Shown here: piece after piece, positions 6,251-38,458 of the stretch
How the letters are laid out: every line of letters begins with the position of its first letter
How positions within the stretch are numbered: position 1 is the first letter of the stretch
From: Saccostrea cucullata
Lineage: Eukaryota
Length of the DNA: 64,000 bases
Reading direction: 5' to 3'
NCBI RefSeq assembly: GCF_032062105.1
Contig: NW_026938675.1
Coordinates: 1-64,000 of the forward strand
The notes under the pieces: generated by a model
What the model saw: only the letters and a program-made list of their open reading frames with translations
What the model was told of the DNA's origin: nothing
Databases searched by the model: none
Made by a program: the position numbers and the translations under genes

Positions 6251-6602
6251 GGCCTAGAAAAAAAATATGTTTGTTTCCGCTTTCAGGCTGAAAAAATGTA
6301 GGGTAGGTAGGTAGGCAATTTTTTTTTTTGAAAATTTTTTTTTGCTTCTATAATCAAAACATGTATAGAATTAACATTAATGATAAAAGAAATGGTGTTT
6401 TCAAGCATTTCTGTGACTTAGACTTTTAACAGAAAGGTGACCAAAACTTCTTTCTGTCTTGAAAAGCTTGCAAAGTTGGAAACCTAATTCCATGGGTGAA
6501 ACCTTGCACATCATGGGACAAAAGCATTAAAAAAATATTTAGGGTCGGCACTATAAATTAGGGTCGGTCGGGAAAGCGGACACGTATTTTTTTTCCTAGG
6601 CC
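6251..6602. mobile_element. PIF/Harbinger-type MITE
   Basis: GGCCTAG...CTAGGCC termini with ~35-bp imperfect TIR; TAA TSD at 6248-6250 and 6603-6605. Confidence 0.8.
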
Positions 6603-7344
6603 TAAGTACCGGAGATACTTAAATAAAGCCATAAAATGTCAAAAGTAGGTCACCGTGACTTACTTTTTGGTCGTCACTCTCCGAAAACTAAATATGCATC
6701 CACTCACAAAGTTTGATGAATCTAAGCCAATAAATATCTAAGATATTTAAATATAGCCATAAAATGTCGAAAGTAGGTCATCGTGATCTACATTTTGGTC
6801 GACATTTTTCGAAGCAATCGAACCAAGTTTGATGATCATAGTTCTGAAGGCAATCAAAATATGCATTTTAAACCAAAATTCGGCAAAATTCAAAAAGTAG
6901 GTCACAGTGACCTACTTTCTTATGAATATGTTTTAAGGTCCCTAGATGCATCAAAGTACAAGATTTGATGATTCTAAACCTACCAGTGTCTGAAATAATG
7001 GGATTTAATGTTTTTAAAAGGATGAGTCATAAAGTTCAAAAAGTAGGTCACGGTAATTCCCCGTGCAAATTTTAATCTTCGACATATCCTGATCCTTGTA
7101 TGTAAGTTTGGTGAAAATCTGCCTGGTGGTTATGGAGAAGAAGATTTTTTAGCAACCAGTACTTTTGGTTTTGTTTTCCTGATTATCTCCCCTTGTTTAA
7201 GGTTCCCAACCCTTATTTTAGTGTAAATGGTAGCCCTTGGGAGTAGTATAAGGCGCCTAGATAGGACCGCATTCTGATTGGCTGAGAGAATCACGTGATC
7301 AGTTCAGATTGGTTGAGGGGATAGGGAGGTCAACTGAGTGCAGT

Positions 7345-7484
7345 CCTAATCCCCTTAACCCTAACCCTAGCCCCCTATCCCCTAACCCTAATCCCCCTTA
7401 ACCCTATCCCTAACTCTAACTAACCCTATCCCCCTTAGCCCTCTAACCCTAACCCCCCTATCCCTAACCCTAACCTATCCCCTA
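7345..7484 (+). repeat. Degenerate (TAACCC)n telomere-like tract in left TIR
   Basis: Many CCCTAA/CCCTAT/CCCTAG units. Confidence 0.85.
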
Positions 7485-7716
7485 AATACGGGGCGCTTAC
7501 ACTGTGTTTACATTATACTATACGTTGGTACTACGATTTTGGCAGCGACTCAAAAGAATGTGATTATGACGTCACGCTTTCATTCACAGTCTACACAGCC
7601 TAACCGGTTCAAACTGGTTTTACTGAAAACAAATAACACACAATACAGATTAGAACACAGATTTTATTTAGAATGAAAAATACATCCAATTACATTTTCT
7701 TTTTCTTCTGTGCCTT

Positions 7717-8271
7717 TTATGTGGTCAAGGGAAGTTTCCTCTTGGTTTCCTGAGGGTTTTTTCCTTCAGTTTTTTGTATGTCTTTTACGAATACATAGCA
7801 TGGATCCATCTGTTTAATTTTCTTACTCTCTCCTGATCCCCCTGATCCTTCTTTTTTCTGGTAAGTGCTTCCTCCTCCTCCTTCTCTCATTTTATCTTGG
7901 CTGATAGTGACTTCTAATTTGAATAATTTGCCACGAATCACAGCAAATTCACTGCTGTTATAAGTTTTCAGTTTATTAAGCTTGTTATCAATATCACTCA
8001 CCTTGGTGTTCAGTTTATTCGCCTTTTTATCAAGATCATTCATCTTGGTGTTCATATCATTCAGTTTTTTATCAAGACCAGACAGCATGTTAACAATCCC
8101 ATCCAGAGTTGTATTTAAGATGCCCATATCTTCTTTATCCACATATTCAGGAAAATTATACATGCCCAAATTCAAATCCAAATCCACTGCATCCTGTAAC
8201 TCTGGCATGGGGCCTCCTACATATCCTTCAGGTGTCACATAATACTGGGGATTTTCTGAGGTATTCATCAT
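7717..8271 (-). CDS. 184-aa coiled-coil protein of unknown function (element cargo)
   Basis: Open frame with heptad run LDKKLNDMNTKMNDLDKKANKLNTKVSDIDNKLNKLK; minus-strand TATATAAA at ~8348-8355, TCAGT at ~8322-8326, AATAAA at ~7663-7668. Confidence 0.65.
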   Translation of the reverse strand: MMNTSENPQYYVTPEGYVGGPMPELQDAVDLDLNLGMYNFPEYVDKEDMGILNTTLDGIVNMLSGLDKKLNDMNTKMNDLDKKANKLNTKVSDIDNKLNKLKTYNSSEFAVIRGKLFKLEVTISQDKMREGGGGSTYQKKEGSGGSGESKKIKQMDPCYVFVKDIQKTEGKNPQETKRKLPLTT

Positions 8272-8419
8272 TGCTTCTATTTTTTCACTTCTGTCAAGTT
8301 TTGAAAAAATATCAACTAAGACTGATCTTTAAATTTTACAGTTTTGCTTTATATACCTGCTGTGGGCCGTGTGCACCTTTTACCTGCTTTTTTATACCTG
8401 TTACATCATCTGTAAGGAC

Positions 8420-8530
8420 TATGTGCAAAAAATTAGGGTCATGTGCAAAAAATACGATAGACGTACGTTTTTTTATGCTGACTATACAGGTAATACTAGG
8501 GGGACCGTGTGCAAAAGAAATATACGTTTT
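8420..8530. repeat. ~62-bp repeat cluster 1 (GTGTGCAAAA...TACGATAGAC.TACGTTTTT...CAGGTAATACT)
   Basis: About 1.5 units homologous to 11268-11450; TAGTATTAC on the minus strand at 8490-8498. Confidence 0.8.
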
Positions 8531-9124
8531 ACCTGCGTTTTCTAACAGGGGTATAAAATGACAAGAAAAAGTAAAAATTGATTTTACTGTGGGAGAACAT
8601 AGATGCGATGGAGAAAGTATGTATTCAATACGGAATGAAATGACTGGAAATTTCACACAGGTTAGGAAAATCAGTGACTTTTAATACCAAACCTCAAAAT
8701 CAAAAATCTATGAATTACTAGCCCCTGAAAGACCGGAGAAGTCCTTGGATGCAATGAATAGCGGATCGAATACGATTTCAGAGGAAAATTTTACAGTTAA
8801 GAAAGCTTTTTGTTAGTTTTTTAAGAAAATAAAAATCATGTAAATATCACGTTAGTGTTGTTATTATATGACGTCATCTTTTATACACTCGGGTTCGGGG
8901 TTTCCCCTCAATTTCGCTTTGTCACTGTGGTGGCGCTGTTTTCCAAAAGCGATTTTTTTTTAGCCAATCACATTTGATCACATGATGGATTGTTGATGTT
9001 TTGCCGCGATATTGGAGTATCGTCTGCTATTGTGTTTAAATACAAACCCTCCGAGCGCTCACTGTCATTCTGCATTTTATTCTGCTTGACTGACTACTGT
9101 ATAGAAAGAAGAAGAAAGAAGAAG

Positions 9125-9638
9125 ATGGAATTTCAAGAGGAATTATGGATGCTTCCCGGGATTGCCATCGAGCACCACATTATAGTGAGGCGCCTGGATA
9201 CAGGAGCGGAGATTTCACGCTACAGTGGCCACCAGGAGGGCGCACCCTTATACAAGTACTAGAAGACGACCAAGACCACCTTCAAGATCGCCTCCACCCC
9301 CGCCCAGACCCGCTGCTCCCACCCTCCAGGTACAGGCCCGGAATCAAGGGCGAATTCCCCGCTGGGGCTTCCGTGTCCCTACTCAGGACATTTTTTGTTC
9401 GCTGTGTATGTCTGAAGGAGAGCCCAGCAATTATTGTTGCTTGCGGTGCGTGCAGAGGCCCTCCTGCGTCTTATGCGCCGCCAGGGTGATAGAACAAGAA
9501 ATGCCCTGTCCCCTGTGTAGGAACCAGCAGCGGCTGCTCGTCCCTCTATCCAGGAGGACAGAATTTAGGCGTGAGGATGATTCATCGGATGATGAGCCTT
9601 CCATAGGCCGGATGGTGGAGGAACTATTAAACGCCTAG
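9125..9638 (+). pseudogene. Pro/Arg-rich RING-finger-like protein gene, probably one frameshift near 9190-9225
   Basis: ATG at 9125 (MEFQEELW...); the 9225-9638 frame contains CSLC...CCLRC...CVLC...CPLC and an acidic tail; TTTAAATA ~9036 and TCATT ~9065 upstream. Confidence 0.6.
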
Positions 9639-10591
9639 GGACCCCATCTGGAGCCACCTTGATCACAAAATGAAAAAAACCAAAAAAAAATTTTAAAAAC
9701 CAACAAAAATACCAAAAAAGGCCCTTTTAAGGGCCGCCCAATTGTTTAGAAAAGATGCCTACTTAAACAGTCGGTAACTAAGAAACGTGTTGTGTCTTAA
9801 AAAGATTTTCTTTTTTTTTCAAAAATACAATCAAAGTAACGATTGTATCTTAGAAAAAAGATGATGATCTTTTTTATAATACAGTCAACGAAAATGAAAC
9901 GATTTGTGTGTGTTCAAATAAAAAAAAGAAAAGATTACCTTATACAGTGGGTAAACAAAGAAAGAGTACCTTATACAGAGGGTAAACAAGAAACGTGTGT
10001 CTCTCAAGTTATAACACCAGGTCACATTTTTTTTTTTAAAAACTTAGAATTTTATTTAATAATAACTTTAACTTTTTTCACTTTTAAATTTTTTAACTTT
10101 TAAATTTTTTAATAATAATAATAATAATAATAAACCCTTTTTTAAAATAAATTCACATCAAACACAGACATATATTTTTTTATTTTTTCATCAAAACAAT
10201 AACACATACATACATACATACAAATACACTTAATGTAGATGAAGAATGTACACCTATTTTTGTCTTAAGTGTGTACAAATTGTTCAATATAATGTCTTTA
10301 ATGAGTCCAGTTTCCTTTTTCACCAAAAACAAACAATATCACGTACACTTCATGTGAATGAAGAATGTACACCTGTTTGTCATAAGTGTGGGGTATGTTC
10401 AATAGTACCTTGTATCTCCTGAAGACTCATGATGTTAAAAAATGAATCTATTTTTTAAAAACACCCTTGTTTTTATATAAAATACAACAACAACAATAAA
10501 AAACAGTTCAATCTTTTTTATTCAACATCTTGTGTTATCTACATACTGAAAGAACTTTTTTTTCTTCATAGCTTCTCTACCTGCAATGGCT

Positions 10592-11143
10592 TCAGGTTTT
10601 CTTCCAGGTTCCTATCTCCCATTGTATCCAATCTCTGGGGTCCAATTCTTTGTTTCTCTCCTCAGGTTTCGGAACACCAGATTCTTCATAGTCACCTCCT
10701 TGCTTGTAAAACATACTTTCCAATTCTGGGGTACTGCAAGACATAGCAAATCTGGCAGTACAATGAAGTTTTTAGATATCCAGTCCTCCTACTGGTCTTT
10801 TCATTTAAATGAATCCCCTGATTTGATGCAGTTCTCCTGTCCAGGGATGTCTTTCCTTTTGAATAATCAAATACTGGAAATCATCTTCCTTGCTCAGAAA
10901 CATATCTATATCTTCTTCTTCTTTGGGGTCTGAAATGATGAAAGTCCAATTAATGGCTATCCTGTAACATCTGTCTGGACATTTAGGATCCTTCACTTTC
11001 TCATGCAGGGGTAAATATTCATTCCTGGGTTCAGGATCCAGGGTTTTCAACTCTATTCTTCTTTTTGTTTGAGGAGCTTCGTGATCCACCTCCAGAGGTT
11101 CTATCATTCTCTTTTCTAATAAGGTAAATTTATCCATCTCCAT
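10592..11143 (-). pseudogene. CRESS-DNA-virus Rep-like HUH endonuclease domain, two in-frame TAA stops, no helicase domain
   Basis: Single frame: WTFIISDP (motif I-like), FQYLIIQKERHPWTGELHQIRGFI* (motif II-like), MKRPVGGLDI*KLHCTARFAMSCSTPELESMFYKQGGDYEESGVP (motif III region). Stops at 10805-10807 and 10772-10774; frame ends at TGA 10592. Confidence 0.7.
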
Positions 11144-11267
11144 GTCTTTTTTCTTCTAATATTCTTGGAATTTGTTTGGCCAAACTGTCGTTTACTCAAC
11201 TGCCCAACTGATGACGATTTTCTTTAACACCTTGTTTTTATACCCCAACCTTGAAAAGATAAGGAGC

Positions 11268-11450
11268 GTGTGCAAAATGTACGATAGACCTACGTTTTTT
11301 ATGCTGACTACACAGGTAATACTTGGGCTCGTGTGCAAAGAAATATACGATAGGCCTACGTTTTTATGCTAACTGCACAGGTAATACTTGCGCCGTGTGC
11401 AAAACATACGATAGACCTACGTTTTTTTTATGTACACAGGTAAATACTTG
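11268..11450. repeat. ~62-bp repeat cluster 2, three tandem units
   Basis: Three GTGTGCAAA...TACGATAG.CCTACGTTTTT...CAGGTAATACTTG units; AAGTATTAC on the minus strand at 11316-11324 and 11381-11389. Confidence 0.85.
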
Positions 11451-11853
11451 GCAGCGATTCAAGAATGAGATTATGACGTCACACTTTTTCATTCATAGTC
11501 TAGACAGTCTAACCAGTTTGAACTGGATTTTTTTACTGAAAACAAAAGACAAAGAACACAGAATTTTTGATTTTTCATTTTTATTTGTAACAACAAACAA
11601 CAACAAATAACAAACAACTTATTTACAATACATTTTGATAAAAACATTGACACTTTTGTCCAATATCCGTACGTAATTTATGATAAGTGTTTTGAAAATA
11701 AGTTGTTTGTTGTTTGTTGTTACAAATAAAAATAAAAAATTCTGTGTTTTTTGTCTTTTGTTTTCAGTAAAAAAATCCAATTCAAATTGGTTAGACTGTC
11801 TAGACTATGAATGAATGCGTGACGTCATAATGACATTTTTGAAACGCTGCCAA
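11449..11853. repeat. Large inverted repeat (arms ~190 bp, loop ~35 bp) made from inner-TIR sequence
   Basis: TTGGCAGCG...TGACGTCAC...AGTCTAGACAGTCTAACCA...CAACTTATTT mirrored at 11677-11853. Confidence 0.85.
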
Positions 11854-11906
11854 AATCGTAGTAGCAGCGTATAGTATAATGTAAACACAGTGTAACCGCC
11901 CCGTAT

Positions 11907-12042
11907 TTAGGGGATAGGTTAGGGTTAGGGCTAAGGGGGGGGGGGGTAGGGCAAGGGGGTTAGGGTTAAGGGTTTAGGGCTAGGGGTTAGGGTTAGAGGG
12001 CTAAAGGGGTAGGGATAGGGGTTAAGGTTAGGGGGTTAGGAC
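11907..12042 (+). repeat. Degenerate (TTAGGG)n telomere-like tract in right TIR
   Basis: GGGTTAGGGTTAGGG-type units mirroring 7345-7484. Confidence 0.85.
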
Positions 12043-13209
12043 TGGGTTGACCTCCCTATCCCCTCAACCAATCAGAACTGATCACGTGATTCTCTAAGCC
12101 AATCAGAATCCTCCCCTATCTAGGTGCCTTATACTACTCTTGGGCCAAGGATACCCTGTGACAAATTTGGTACCTATTGGCCAAGGGGTTCCTGAGTTAT
12201 ATGGCCCTTTTTCTAAAAAGTTTATGCACACCGCACAAATGTCCGTAGCATTAGCTCTTTGAGCCTTTGAGCCTCAGAAGAGCTAAAAATAAAGAGATAT
12301 ATATGTTACACATAAATATACGTATTTATTCCTTACGGCGCAATTCATCAAAATAGTCTGCTTGTTGTGAATCGAATTCTTCTATGACTGCAGGAATACT
12401 GTAACAGGACAGAAAACGGGAAATAATGCGGGAACTTGGTGCTAGAACTTTTAAATGGTTAAAAAGTATTACATACTGCTGAATGAGCCGCAATGCATTG
12501 TGGGCTACTACAAGTTCCCAGCTGTGTTGAAAATAAGGGGCAACTTGAATTGTCCCTTGGAAACTTATTTTTAATTCTTTTTTGAGATTTGTGAAAGAAA
12601 TATTTAAAATGATGTATAATCTTTCATTTCTATGCTCACATTTACAAAACTTGCTTTATGAAGCATAATATATCAACTCATAATATATCGGCCTAAATCA
12701 TTGTTCAAAGAGACGTAGATGCTATCGTTTCGATAAAACATTGATTTTTTTTTCACGTGATATTCGTGTACATAGTTTTAGCAGGTAGTATGTACGTCTT
12801 TGGTTTTAGACTACAGGAGAGGGTGTGCAATTATTATTTAACCCCTCAATATCATCAGAAAGTTTTTTTATGTACATGTACATGCAACCGTCAAAGCGTT
12901 TGTACGATATTCGAAGCAATTATTAATCATCTAAAACAAATACAATATTAAATGTGAGCATGGAGCAATGTCTTTAGAATATAATCTTTCAATTTCGGTC
13001 TTATAAAGTGATAAAGAAACTCTACAGTTTTTCCGGTAGCGAGTTAAATTTTGTGAAGTAAACCGACTAAAACCACGTGTCGCCATTGAATCGTAAACAC
13101 GTAGTAGACTGCCATGCTTTGGAACTCATTCACTTGATTGGAGAACAGGTGTGACGAGGACATCGTCACGTGTTGAAAATTGCCTTCCATATAAGGTAGT
13201 GGTCTCGAC

Positions 13210-16237: not shown

Positions 16238-17089
16238 CTGCAGATCTGTAGCTCTCCGAAATATATATATATTGATAGACCGGAGAGCTACAGAGCCACC
16301 CATTGAAAAAACTGTATATTTATTGCGCACAAAAAATTACCTATCTGTTTACTTTACATACTGCTGAATGAGCCGCAATGCATTGTGGGCTACTACATGT
16401 TCCCAGCTGTGTTGAAAATAAGGGGCGACTTGAATTGTCCCTTGGAAACTTATTTTTAATTCTTTTTTGAGATTTGTGAAAGAAATATTTAAAATGATGT
16501 ATAATCTTTCATTTCTATGCTCACATTTACAAAACTTGCTTTATGAAGCATAATATATCAACTCATAATATATCGGCCTAAATCATTGTTCAAAGAGACG
16601 TAGATGCTATCGTTTCGATAAAACATTGATTTTTTTTTTCACGTGATATTCGTGTACATAGTTTTAGCAGGTAGTATGTAGGTCTTTGGTTTTAGACTAC
16701 AGGAGAGGGTGTGCAATTATTATTTAACCCCTCAACATCATCAGAAAGTTTTTTATGTACATGCAACCGTCAAAGCGTTTGTACGATATTCGAAGCAATT
16801 ATTAATCATCTAAAACAAATACAATATTAAATGTGAGCATGGACCAATGTCTTTAGAATATAATCTTTCAATTTCGGTCTTATAAAGCGATAAAGAAACT
16901 CTACAGTTTTTCCGGTAGCGAGTTAAATTTTGTGAAGTAAACCGACTAAAACCACGTGTCACCATTGAATCGTAAACACGTAGTAGACTGCCATGCTTTG
17001 GAACTCATTCACTTGATTGGAGAACGGGTGTGACAAGGACATCGTCACGTGTTGAAAATTGCCTTCCATATAAGGTAGTGGTCTCGACC

Positions 17090-36478: not shown

Positions 36479-38458
36479 TTTAGCTCTTCTGTGCCAAAGG
36501 CTCAAAGAGCTAATGCTATGGCCATTTGTGCGGTGTGCGTAAACTTTATAGAATATGGGCCATAACTCAGGAACCCCTTGGCCAATAGGTACCAGATTTG
36601 TCACAGGGTATCCTTGGTCCAAGGGCTACCATTTATACTAAAATAAGGGTTCGGACCCTTAAACAAGGGGAGATAATCAGGAAAACAAAAAAACAAAACC
36701 AAAAGTACTGGTTGCTAAAAAATCTTCTTCTCCATAACCACCAGGCAGATTTTCACCAAACTGACATACAAGGATCAGGATATGTCGATTTAAATTTGCA
36801 CGGGGAATTACCCTGGGGCAAAGGGCGTGGTCTCAAGGTCTCTTCAAAGTTGACCTAAATTTACAATTGATAAAACGTGTATATTTTGCTTACTATAAAG
36901 ACTAAGATCATCAAATCTTGTAAGTTTATGCACCTTACGACTTCACAATATGTTAGTGCAAAAGTAGGTCACGGTGACCTACTTTTTAAATGTTGCGGGG
37001 ATTTGTTTTCAAAAATATTTGAAGGCATATTTTGGACACTGTAAGGCCTATGATCATCAAACTTTGTCAGTTGATGCATCTTGGGTCCTCGAACAATGTC
37101 AACTTAAAAGTCGGTCACCGTGACCTACTTTTTGAACTTAATGACTTATCCTTTTAAAAACATAAATCCTATTATTTCAGACTCTGGGAGGTTTAGAATC
37201 ATCAAATCTTGTACTTTGATGCATCTAGGGACCTTAAAACATATTCATATAAAAGTAGGTCACTGTGATCTACTTTTTGAATTTGGCGACATTTGTTATC
37301 AAATGGTTTAAAATGCATATTTTGATTACCTTCAGACCTATGATCATCAAACTTGGTCGGTAGATGCATCTTGGGTCTTCGGAAAATTGTCAACCAAAAT
37401 GTAGGTCACGATGACCTACTTTCGACATTTTATGGCTATATTTAAGTATCTTAGGTATTTATTGGCTTAGATTCATAAAACTTTGTGAGTGGAAGCATAT
37501 TTAGTTTTCGGAGAGTGACGACCAAAAAGTAGGTCATGGTGACCTACTTTTGACATTTTGTGGCTATAATCAAGTATCTACTTATTGACATAAAATCATC
37601 AAACTTTGTCAGTTGATGCATCTTGGGTTTTCGGAGATTGTCGACCAAAAAGTAGTTCACAGTGACCTACTTTTGACATATGGCTATATTTAAGTATCTC
37701 AGGCACTTATTGGCTAAGAATCATCAAACTTTGTCAGTTGAGGCATCTTGGGTTTTCGGAGAATGTCGACCAAAAAGTAGGTCACCGTGACCTACTTTTG
37801 AATATCTCAGGTACGTATTAGCTTAGAATCATCAAACTTTGTCAGTTTAGGCACCTTGGGTTTTCGGAGAACGTCGACCAAAAAGTAGGTCACTGTGACC
37901 TACTTTTGACATTTTATGGCTATTTTTAATTATATCTGGTACTTATTGGCTCGGAATCATCAAACTTTGTCAGTTGAGGCATCTTACGGTTTCATTGAAT
38001 GTCCAACAAGAAGTAGGTCACGGTGACCTACTTTTGAATATCTCAGGTACTTATTGGCTTAAAGTCAGCAAATTTTGTCAGTTCAGGCATCTTGGGTTTT
38101 TGCATAACGTCGACCAAAAAGTAGGTCACCGTGACCTACTTTGCCATTTGATGGGTATATTTAATTATCTCTGGTACTAATTGGCTTAGAATCGTCAAAC
38201 TTTGTCAGATGATGCATCTTGGGTTTTTAGAGAATGTTGACCAAAGAGTAAGTCATGGTGACCTACTTTTGATTCACTGTGACCTACTTATGGTATTTTA
38301 TAATTATATCTTCAGTCTTAACTGGCTAAATATTATCAAACTTTGTAAGTTGATGCATTTTGGGTCTTATGATACTATTAGAGTTCGAGGCTTCTAATAG
38401 AAGTGATAGATTGTACAATTTATCAGAAGAGCGATTCAAGGCCCATGGGCCTCTTGTT
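36479..38458 (+). mobile_element. Helentron-type element with internal ~80-100-bp tandem repeats
   Basis: TTTAGCTCTTCTG head; many GGTCAC.GTGACCTACTTTT / ATCATCAAACTTTGTCAGTTG units; AAGAGCGATTCAAGGCCCATGGGCCTCTTGTT tail. Confidence 0.9.

What the first reader, a model, noticed from the sequence alone, without database searches (positions are those of the whole stretch)
7242..12138. 4.9-kb mini-Polinton carrying only virus-like accessory genes and origin-like signals
Seen: AGTAGT...ACTACT ends, exact 6-bp TSD CTTGGG, ~430-bp TIRs, and a clean insertion splitting a Helentron. Established: (AGT)n ends with 6-bp TSDs are Polinton/Maverick hallmarks, and autonomous Polintons are 15-25 kb with pPolB, RVE integrase, ATPase and capsid genes. 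None of those is visible here. The interior instead holds a Rep-like HUH gene, a RING gene, a coiled-coil gene, nonamer repeats and telomere-like tracts. Inference: a non-autonomous satellite-like element moved in trans by a Polinton integrase, or a deletion derivative of an unusual Polinton lineage that acquired CRESS-virus parts. I do not know this combination as a described system.
Basis: partly seen in the sequence, partly recalled or inferred. Interest (0 to 1): 0.9.

Follow-up and report, generated by a model that had tools for sequence, protein, structure and literature searches.

The report
Deleted oyster Maverick keeping accessory genes
This 4.9-kb insertion is a decayed, internally deleted copy of an oyster Maverick/Polinton virus-like element: it keeps the element's ends and a block of host-manipulating accessory genes but has lost the integrase and candidate capsid genes, so it is an ordinary kind of derivative with an unusual gene cargo.

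Summary
The element spans window 7242-12138. It has (AGT)2/(ACT)2 ends, arms of about 410 bp, and a perfect 6-bp duplication (CTTGGG). Two uninterrupted paralogous sites in the same window prove the duplication.

The element is not a free-standing new system. Saccostrea cucullata loci carry the same invariant 11-nt terminus and the same genes in longer elements. One of these (L023) also has an rve+chromodomain integrase, candidate capsid ORFs and a protease-like ORF. The window copy still holds a remnant of the last ~52 codons of that protease-like gene beside its right arm, so it is an internal-deletion derivative.

The retained module contains:
- a coiled-coil gene (relatives end in bZIP_Maf or CCHC knuckles);
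- a GADD34-like PP1-binding gene;
- a RING gene followed by a histone-type 3' stem-loop (6 of 6 copies);
- remnants of a macro-like ORF;
- a small gene only weakly similar to CRESS Rep.

Three of the four main genes are broken here. Copies differ with dN/dS of 0.3-0.7.

Telomere-like tracts lie inside the arms of only some lineages. The nonamer words sit in promoter repeats that form no stable hairpin.

No pPolB was seen, and satellite behaviour is untested.

The parts
7236..7241 (.). Left copy of the 6-bp target-site duplication (CTTGGG)
   Evidence: The paralogous empty sites carry this hexamer once.
7242..12138 (.). Whole element, 4897 bp: an internally deleted Maverick/Polinton derivative
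7242..7650 (+). Left terminal inverted repeat. The first 11 nt are invariant in all nine family ends compared. It holds CCAAT-type words, a CACGTG palindrome and a CRE-type word (7567).
7345..7478 (+). Degenerate telomere-like tract inside the left arm, with the C-rich strand reading inward from the end
7717..8271 (-). Coiled-coil gene. The 184-aa ORF is intact but lacks the C-terminal bZIP_Maf or CCHC part that relatives have.
   Evidence: dN/dS among copies is 0.28-0.73.
8427..8545 (.). Two ~60-65-bp repeat units between the divergent coiled-coil and PP1-binding genes
8580..8814 (+). Remnant of a GADD34/PPP1R15-like PP1c-binding gene. It is broken (at least one frameshift plus in-frame stops) and the N-terminal half is not recognisable.
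   Evidence: Intact relatives are L004 7956-8471 (PF10488, E=2.7e-5) and P0011 (27.4 bits against a cut-off of 26.1).
9125..9638 (+). RING-type zinc-finger gene, broken by at least one frameshift. CCAAT and TATA words and a CRE-type word (8869) lie upstream.
   Evidence: Intact relatives: L001 8600-9172, L004 7027-7797, L022 1542-2075 and 15073-15603.
9715..9760 (+). Histone-type 3' stem-loop, about 80 nt after the RING stop codon
   Evidence: RF00032, 31 bits, E=7e-6. The same feature follows the RING ORF in L001 twice (40.1 and 35.9 bits, above the gathering score), in L004 and in L022 twice.
10211..10524 (-). Remnants of the start and end regions of a 167-aa macro-like ORF that is intact in relatives. 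Most of the gene is deleted here.
   Evidence: Relatives.
10528..11146 (-). Small 'Rep-like A' gene, broken by at least one frameshift and two to three in-frame stops
   Evidence: The intact relative P0008 is 88% identical.
11254..11451 (.). Three tandem ~65-bp units directly upstream of the TATA box of the Rep-like gene. They contain the nonamer-like words.
11626..11760 (-). Remnant of the last ~52 codons of the protease-like gene of longer relatives, at the inner edge of the right arm. It marks the internal deletion.
   Evidence: tblastn E=1e-8 to 4e-9, 46% identity.
11728..12138 (-). Right terminal inverted repeat
11917..12040 (+). Degenerate telomere-like tract inside the right arm, with the G-rich strand reading outward
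12139..12144 (.). Right copy of the 6-bp target-site duplication (CTTGGG)
6603..7235 (.). Left part of the interrupted host repeat, with a ~128-bp tandem array (Helentron/HINE-like; not confirmed)
36618..36623 (-). Empty paralogous site 1 (single CTTGGA)
50793..50798 (-). Empty paralogous site 2 (single CTTGGG)

Best explanation
The element is a non-autonomous, internally deleted copy of an oyster Maverick/Polinton (adintovirus-like) lineage.

Shown:
- It has the Maverick end motif, inverted arms and a 6-bp duplication, and it sits cleanly inside another repeat.
- It shares its invariant terminus and its genes with longer Saccostrea elements. L023 carries a retrovirus-type integrase with a chromodomain; L022 and L023 both carry a protease-like ORF and large unassigned ORFs.
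- It keeps a stub of that protease-like gene at the point where the core genes are missing.

Inferred:
- The parent element lost everything between one arm and the end of the protease-like gene.
- The product was inserted here by an integrase supplied by a complete relative.
- It has since decayed. The arms differ by 8-30% depending on the segment, and three of the four main genes are broken.

The retained block is the parent's end-proximal accessory module. Its likely roles, all inferred, are:
- transcription control (coiled-coil protein with bZIP_Maf or zinc-knuckle tails; CRE-type words in the arms and promoters);
- keeping translation going under stress (a PP1-recruiting GADD34-like protein);
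- ubiquitin ligation, with expression tied to S phase through a histone-type mRNA 3' end (RING gene);
- ADP-ribose handling (macro-like ORF);
- DNA binding by small proteins that may descend from a Rep nuclease domain.
For: Ends, arms and duplication. The definition of the (AGT)2//(ACT)2 motif with a perfect 6-bp duplication comes from PMC8097293.

Empty sites.

A second complete insertion with a different perfect duplication (GAGGTT): L003 2375-11028.

The first 11 nt are invariant in nine ends from seven loci.

Longer relatives: L022 and L023 share 91-94% identity over about 6.6 kb. That stretch covers a 473-aa ORF, the protease-like ORF, Rep-like A and B, and ORF167, and both loci end in the family terminus.

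Integrase in L023: rve 41 bits and Chromo 37.6 bits, both above the cut-offs.

Protease-like remnant in the window.

No other core-gene remnant in the 64-kb window.

Gene identities: PP1c_bdg, bZIP_Maf, zf-CCHC; histone stem-loop in 6 of 6 copies.

Constraint on the genes: dN/dS 0.28-0.73 for the coiled-coil gene, 0.31 for the Rep-like gene, and pN 0.36 against pS 0.84 for the RING gene.

Break counts.
Against: - No protein-primed polymerase or packaging ATPase was seen. The 10 kb held upstream in L023 stops before where they would lie, so the parent's full Maverick status is incomplete.
- The candidate capsid ORFs have no recognisable similarity.
- The protease-like ORF has only a weak match to a clan-CE viral cysteine protease (E=0.065), although the His and Cys motifs align. 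Its predicted structure was unusable (pLDDT 35).
- All longer relatives come from another oyster genus. No complete partner was available from the window's own genome.
- The left ends of L001 and L004 are not inverted repeats, so the family is structurally messy.
Confidence: 0.8

Rival explanations
1. The mini-elements are a self-sustaining satellite lineage. They keep only the ends and the host-manipulating module, and they depend on complete Mavericks for replication, packaging and integration, much as transpovirons depend on their helpers. On this reading the telomere-like tracts are an adaptation of that lineage.
For: - Several structurally different short or rearranged copies keep the accessory module and the terminus: the window copy, L002, L003, L004 and L006.
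- The genes show dN/dS below 1.
- Telomere-like tracts, always in the orientation of true chromosome ends, occur in the window copy, L001, L002 and L006. They are absent from L022 and L023, the two copies with core-gene ORFs (integrase in L023 only), and from L003-L005.
- Transpovirons set a precedent for capsid-less linear elements with inverted repeats (PMC5499653).
Against: - The constraint could all date from time spent inside complete elements.
- The window copy is itself decayed.
- The derivatives differ in structure, as expected from repeated independent deletions rather than one propagating lineage.
- No free linear or circular form, no expression data and no copy-number census are in hand.
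Confidence: 0.15
2. A chimera of a Polinton and a CRESS-DNA virus: the Rep-like genes and nonamer repeats form a working rolling-circle origin and initiator acquired from a circular ssDNA virus.
For: - Three family members hit Pfam Viral_Rep in the same region (E=0.016, 1.7e-3, 2.5e-4).
- A family profile weakly hits two solved Rep nuclease domains (E=0.11).
- A word resembling, from memory, the circovirus-type origin nonamer occurs three times exactly in the window. All three are in the repeats next to the element's genes, against 0.5 expected.
Against: - Every hit is below the curated cut-off (best 21.7 bits against 26).
- An exhaustive search of 1.84 billion representatives found only three family members and no Rep.
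- A broader profile weakened the Rep match to E=0.5. It also showed that the supposed tyrosine-motif region resembles a single TPR-type helix pair.
- The proteins are 150-200 aa with no helicase.
- The metal-binding motif is not canonical in any member (alignment A6, judged against general knowledge of the motif).
- The nonamer words do not sit in stable hairpins: z-scores run from -0.7 to +0.9.
- The three words are copies of one repeat unit, not independent events.
Confidence: 0.04
3. A transposon of another superfamily that picked up host gene fragments at random, as Pack-MULEs and Helitrons do.
For: Several parts have host-like counterparts: the bZIP_Maf domain, the PP1-binding motif, the histone 3' stem-loop and the CCHC knuckles.
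Against: - The end motif and the duplication length are those of Mavericks.
- The same genes in the same order lie next to integrase and virus-like ORFs in L023.
- The ORFs are complete genes with their own promoters and are under constraint.
Confidence: 0.01

Closest known systems
Mavericks/Polintons (adintovirus-like elements) of animals
   Same: - (AGT)2//(ACT)2 end motif, a perfect 6-bp duplication and inverted arms (PMC8097293).
- A relative carries an rve integrase with a chromodomain, and relatives carry a protease-like ORF.
- The accessory genes sit next to one end, as in the vertebrate gene map of that paper.
   Different: - The window copy has no integrase, polymerase, ATPase or capsid gene.
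- The accessory set was not found described in the papers searched: a PP1-binding gene, a RING gene with a histone-type 3' end, a macro-like ORF, Rep-like paralogues and a bZIP/CCHC coiled-coil gene.
- Some lineages carry telomere-like subterminal tracts.
Internally deleted non-autonomous DNA transposons in general
   Same: It keeps both ends and loses the mobility genes. It is presumably moved by a complete relative.
   Different: It keeps a block of four to five accessory genes rather than shrinking to the ends alone.
Transpovirons (PMC5499653)
   Same: Small elements with inverted terminal repeats and no capsid genes, derived by gene loss from a Polinton-related ancestor.
   Different: Transpovirons keep a helicase-polymerase fusion gene and are known as free linear DNA tied to giant viruses. 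No free form or helper link is shown here.
GADD34/PPP1R15 and its viral look-alikes (Pfam PF10488)
   Same: The C-terminal PP1c-binding region is recognised in family members at or near the curated cut-off.
   Different: The proteins are much shorter (134-171 aa), sit in a mobile element, and are broken in the window copy. Activity is untested.
CRESS-DNA virus Rep nuclease domain (Pfam PF02407)
   Same: There is weak, colinear similarity over the region of the first two motifs.
   Different: The match is below threshold, the motifs are not canonical, and there is no helicase and no hairpin origin.

Membership tests
Maverick/Polinton | 5'-(AGT)2 ... (ACT)2-3' end motif | tested here: met
   The motif is defined in PMC8097293.
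Maverick/Polinton | Perfect 6-bp target-site duplication | tested here: met
   CTTGGG, with two empty paralogous sites. A second insertion, L003, has GAGGTT.
Maverick/Polinton | Terminal inverted repeats | tested here: met
   About 412 aligned columns at 81% identity.
Maverick/Polinton | Retrovirus-like integrase encoded by the element | tested here: not met
   Absent from the window element. Present in the longer relative L023: rve 41 bits and Chromo 37.6 bits.
Maverick/Polinton | [quoted passage not shown] | tested here: not met
   Absent from the window element. Not visible in the stretches held for the relatives. The region where it would lie in L023 is outside the 10-kb flank, so the parent's polymerase could not be tested.
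Maverick/Polinton | Capsid proteins and packaging ATPase | tested here: not met
   None in the window element. The relatives' 473-aa and 332-aa ORFs have no recognisable similarity in Pfam or PDB sequence searches.
Maverick/Polinton | Adenain-like (clan CE) cysteine protease | tested here: inconclusive
   The relatives' 167-aa ORF has as its best PDB match a viral clan-CE protease, E=0.065, with the His and Cys motifs aligned. There is no Pfam hit and the model's pLDDT is 35. The window keeps only a 52-codon remnant.
CRESS-DNA virus Rep (HUH nuclease plus SF3 helicase) | Match to the Rep nuclease family at the curated threshold | tested here: not met
   Best score 21.7 bits against a cut-off of 26. 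PDB profile E=0.11-0.5. No Rep among the hits of the exhaustive search.
CRESS-DNA virus Rep (HUH nuclease plus SF3 helicase) | SF3 helicase domain | tested here: not met
   Intact family members are 154-199 aa with no further domain.
CRESS-DNA virus Rep (HUH nuclease plus SF3 helicase) | Origin nonamer at the top of a stable hairpin | tested here: not met
   Nonamer-like words are present, but the units fold no better than shuffles.
Replication-dependent histone mRNA 3' end (Rfam RF00032) | Stem-loop match at the gathering score, downstream of a coding region | tested here: met
   40.1 and 35.9 bits in L001, against a gathering score of 34. The window scores 31, L004 32.7 and L022 32.4 twice. 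In every case it lies 75-90 nt after the RING stop codon.
PPP1R15/GADD34-type PP1c-binding proteins (PF10488) | PP1c-binding region at the curated threshold | tested here: met
   P0011 scores 27.4 bits against 26.1. The L004 ORF scores 24.4 bits. The window copy is broken.
bZIP_Maf transcription factors (PF03131) | bZIP_Maf domain | tested here: not met
   Present in relatives P0001 (69 bits) and P0002 (79 bits). The window ORF ends before it.
Satellite or transpoviron-like dependent replicon | Free linear or circular form, and association with a helper | not testable with these tools
   No read data or source-genome census are available.
Helentron-associated element (host repeat) | Central tandem array with flanks carrying subterminal repeats and a 3' palindrome (PMC7492417) | tested here: inconclusive
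   A tandem ~128-bp array and three copies were seen in the window. The flank substructures were not compared with a reference.

The most novel reading that the evidence does not exclude
The short copies are not dead deletion products. They are a propagating satellite lineage of oyster Mavericks that keeps only the cis-acting ends and a host-manipulating early-gene module. The correctly oriented telomere-like tracts in the arms would then be a lineage-specific device, for example recruiting telomere-binding proteins to a linear form.
Probability: 0.12. Interest if true: 0.8.

Novelty: new member of a known kind. Interest (0 to 1): 0.42.

Why it matters
As a mobile element it is ordinary: a deletion derivative of a Maverick.

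Its value is as a pointer to an oyster Maverick lineage whose end-proximal accessory module is unusually legible. That module holds a GADD34-like PP1 recruiter, a RING gene that borrows the histone mRNA 3'-end signal, a macro-like ORF, bZIP/zinc-knuckle coiled-coil proteins and small possibly Rep-derived proteins. These look like the early, host-controlling genes of a DNA virus. They give concrete candidates for how Mavericks deal with host translation shut-off, ubiquitin pathways and cell-cycle timing in an aquaculture species.

The histone-type 3' end on a mobile-element gene was found in six of six copies. The telomere-like subterminal tracts occur in some lineages only. These are the two least expected details.

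Tried and rejected
- Exact look-up of the window's coiled-coil protein found nothing.
- A homologue search with an intact RING protein gave no hits.
- The search with the PP1-binding ORF gave one hit only.
- Scans for the terminal word in viral contigs gave nothing.
- The one metagenome scan gave 13 matches with no homology to the element, so they are chance.
- AlphaFold models of the Rep-like protein (pLDDT 36) and the protease-like protein (pLDDT 35) were too poor to use, so no fold search was run.
- I guessed a macro domain for ORF167. Pfam did not confirm it. It rests only on six weak, colinear PDB matches, all of them macro-type proteins (E=0.13-0.65).
- I guessed an adenain family for the 167-aa ORF. 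Pfam did not confirm that either.
- Hairpin origins around the nonamer words are rejected.
- The apparent third Rep motif is rejected, because that region matches a TPR-type unit.
- Literature searches found no description of telomere-like tracts in Maverick arms, or of this accessory set. This is absence in the library searched, not proof of novelty.

Full report
**1. Observation**

The window has no N runs. The element runs from 7242 to 12138. It begins with two AGT triplets and ends with two ACT triplets. CTTGGG lies immediately outside each end. The 24-nt terminal word is found only at these two places in 64 kb, against 0 expected.

The arms align over about 412 columns. Identity is 91.5% in the outer 94 nt, 70% in a degenerate telomere-like tract and 84% in the inner part.

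The left and right flanks were compared separately with the rest of the window. Two other copies of the interrupted repeat run straight across the insertion point. Both copies of the duplicated hexamer map onto one hexamer there, at 36618-36623 and at 50793-50798. The insertion and its 6-bp duplication are therefore real and not chance.

**2. Genes in the window copy**

- **Coiled-coil gene** (7717-8271, minus). The 184-aa ORF is intact.
- **PP1-binding gene remnant** (8580-8814, plus). This is what is left of a gene that is intact in relatives and matches the PP1c-binding family PF10488. The L004 ORF gives E=2.7e-5, and P0011 scores 27.4 bits against a cut-off of 26.1.
- **RING-type gene** (9125-9638, plus) with CCAAT and TATA words upstream.
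- **Histone-type 3' stem-loop** (9715-9760, plus), about 80 nt after the RING stop codon.
- **Remnants of a 167-aa ORF** (10211-10524, minus).
- **Small 'Rep-like' gene** (10528-11146, minus).
- **Three ~65-bp tandem units** (11254-11451), directly upstream of that gene's TATA box. Two related units lie at 8427-8545, between the divergent coiled-coil and PP1-binding genes.
- **Remnant of about 52 codons of a protease-like gene** (11626-11760, minus).

Break counts against intact relatives:

| Gene | State in the window copy |
|---|---|
| Rep-like | at least one frameshift and two to three in-frame stops |
| RING | at least one frameshift |
| PP1-binding | at least one frameshift plus stops; N-terminal half not recognisable |
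| Coiled-coil | unbroken, but ends before the C-terminal domain of its relatives |

**3. The family**

The coiled-coil protein has six relatives annotated in Saccostrea cucullata (GCA_032062105.1) and one in an ENA assembly. Their loci, L001-L006, carry the same genes in the same order.

- The first 11 nt of the element are invariant in nine ends from seven loci.
- L003 2375-11028 is a second complete insertion with a different perfect 6-bp duplication, GAGGTT.
- Relatives of the coiled-coil gene end either in a bZIP_Maf domain (P0001 and P0002, 69 and 79 bits) or in two CCHC knuckles.
- The RING gene is followed by the histone stem-loop in all six copies examined, twice above Rfam's gathering score.
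- Copies differ with dN/dS of 0.28-0.73 (coiled-coil gene, 15 pairs) and 0.31 (Rep-like gene). The RING gene has pN 0.36 against pS 0.84. These were working genes while the family diversified.

**4. The turn: longer relatives**

An ENA contig, L021, showed a second Rep-like paralogue followed by a 167-aa ORF. That ORF belongs to a cluster of 21 sequences at 90% identity or more, with at least 13 annotated S. cucullata loci.

Two of those loci, L022 and L023, share 91-94% identity over about 6.6 kb. In order, that stretch holds:

1. a 473-aa ORF;
2. a 167-aa protease-like ORF;
3. Rep-like A;
4. Rep-like B;
5. ORF167.

Both loci end in the family terminus. In L022 the RING, PP1-binding and coiled-coil genes follow before the terminus.

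L023 also carries an integrase upstream: rve at 41 bits and Chromo at 37.6 bits, both above the cut-offs. Several further ORFs there could not be assigned. The annotated integrase model spans two overlapping reading frames. I searched the two ORFs apart and left the joined step out.

The protease-like ORF has as its best solved relative a viral clan-CE cysteine protease (E=0.065). The His and Cys motifs align. The 473-aa and 332-aa ORFs have no recognisable similarity.

The window's homology to these elements runs inward from the Rep-like side up to the last ~52 codons of the protease-like gene, and then meets the right arm. No other core-gene remnant is present anywhere in the window. The only integrase cross-match is the Gypsy element at about 27.4-27.8 kb.

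**5. Reading**

The (AGT)2//(ACT)2 motif with a perfect 6-bp duplication is the published Maverick signature (PMC8097293). Polintons by definition encode a protein-primed polymerase and an integrase (PMC5499653). The window copy has neither.

The best reading is an internal-deletion derivative of a Maverick lineage that keeps the end-proximal accessory module, was inserted with help in trans, and is now decayed. That the integrase acted in trans is inference. So are the functions proposed for the accessory genes.

**6. What the 'origin-like signals' are**

*Nonamer-like words.* The word occurs exactly three times in the window, always inside the ~65-bp repeats, against 0.5 expected. These are copies of one unit. 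They lie just upstream of TATA boxes, and the units fold no better than shuffled sequence. I read them as promoter repeats. CRE-type palindromes are about eight-fold denser in the element than in the rest of the window. They are conserved in the arms and in the RING promoter of the relatives. This would suit an element that encodes bZIP proteins, but that link is inference.

*Telomere-like tracts.*
- They lie inside the arms.
- The C-rich strand always reads inward from the 5' end. This matches, from general knowledge, the orientation of a real chromosome end.
- They hold 7-8 perfect units per arm here and 14-28 in L001, L002 and L006.
- They are absent from L003-L005, L022 and L023. There, 36-40-bp subterminal repeats take their place.
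- Their role is unknown.

**7. The Rep likeness is weak**

- Pfam Viral_Rep matches three members below threshold.
- A family profile touches two solved Rep nuclease domains at E=0.11. A broader profile weakens this to 0.5.
- The exhaustive search found family members only.
- The region I first took for the tyrosine motif matches a TPR-type unit.
- The structure model was unusable.

**8. Comparison and novelty**

It works like any deletion derivative of a DNA transposon. As a family member it meets the end, arm and duplication criteria of Mavericks, and it fails the gene criteria as a non-autonomous copy should.

I did not find the accessory set, the histone-type 3' end or the telomere-like tracts described in the papers searched. 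Accessory genes next to the ends are known in principle for these elements.

Noticed in passing
window 26810-32014 (minus strand): A Gypsy-type LTR retrotransposon with reverse transcriptase, RNase H and integrase ORFs. A C2H2 zinc-finger ORF lies beside it at 26058-26789.
   Followed up: partly
window 59751-61163 (plus strand): A 470-aa ORF with a reverse-transcriptase domain, probably a non-LTR retroelement.
   Followed up: no
window 6600-7240, 36480-38360, 50640-52720: Three copies of an interspersed repeat with an internal ~128-bp tandem array whose units contain a palindrome. It resembles the Helentron-associated elements described for Crassostrea gigas.
   Followed up: partly
window 12469-13100 and 16354-16979: A 630-bp stretch repeated at 97.6% identity about 4 kb away. 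This is either another repeat family or a local duplication.
   Followed up: no
L022 1-4900 and 11640-18160: A large inverted duplication whose two arms both include the RING and PP1-binding genes and the same nested LINE insertion. Either the arms of this element were copied from one end to the other after the LINE landed, or it is an assembly artefact.
   Followed up: partly
L003 11028 and 18697; L005 18, 7676 and 10908: The same element end with the same flank recurs at spacings of about 7.66 kb and 3.2 kb. That points to tandem segmental duplication or collapsed haplotypes in the Saccostrea assembly.
   Followed up: no
P0010, L022 9313-9912, L004 5542-5958: Rep-like B and a neighbouring ORF begin with a Met-Gly-Asn-Thr-Ser-Ser type N-terminus. 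This resembles, from memory, an N-myristoylation signal.
   Followed up: no
alignment A6, C-terminal 30 residues of the Rep-like proteins: This segment closely matches a single unit of designed consensus TPR proteins. That inflates the PDB E-values through eight-fold repetition in the targets.
   Followed up: partly
L001 3113-4339: A second, divergent RING gene (264 aa) with its own histone-type stem-loop lies about 4.5 kb from the element copy. It may be a fragment of another element.
   Followed up: no
L001 5072 and L004 3297: Two Saccostrea copies share homology for about 3 kb beyond the Rep-like side and stop at the same base, with unrelated flanks and no inverted repeat. The nature of that boundary is unexplained.
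   Followed up: partly
L007 and L021 (ENA assembly ERZ27264474): Short contigs from one assembly filed as a metagenome carry intact family genes 88-94% identical to the oyster copies. The sample probably contains oyster DNA or RNA.
   Followed up: no
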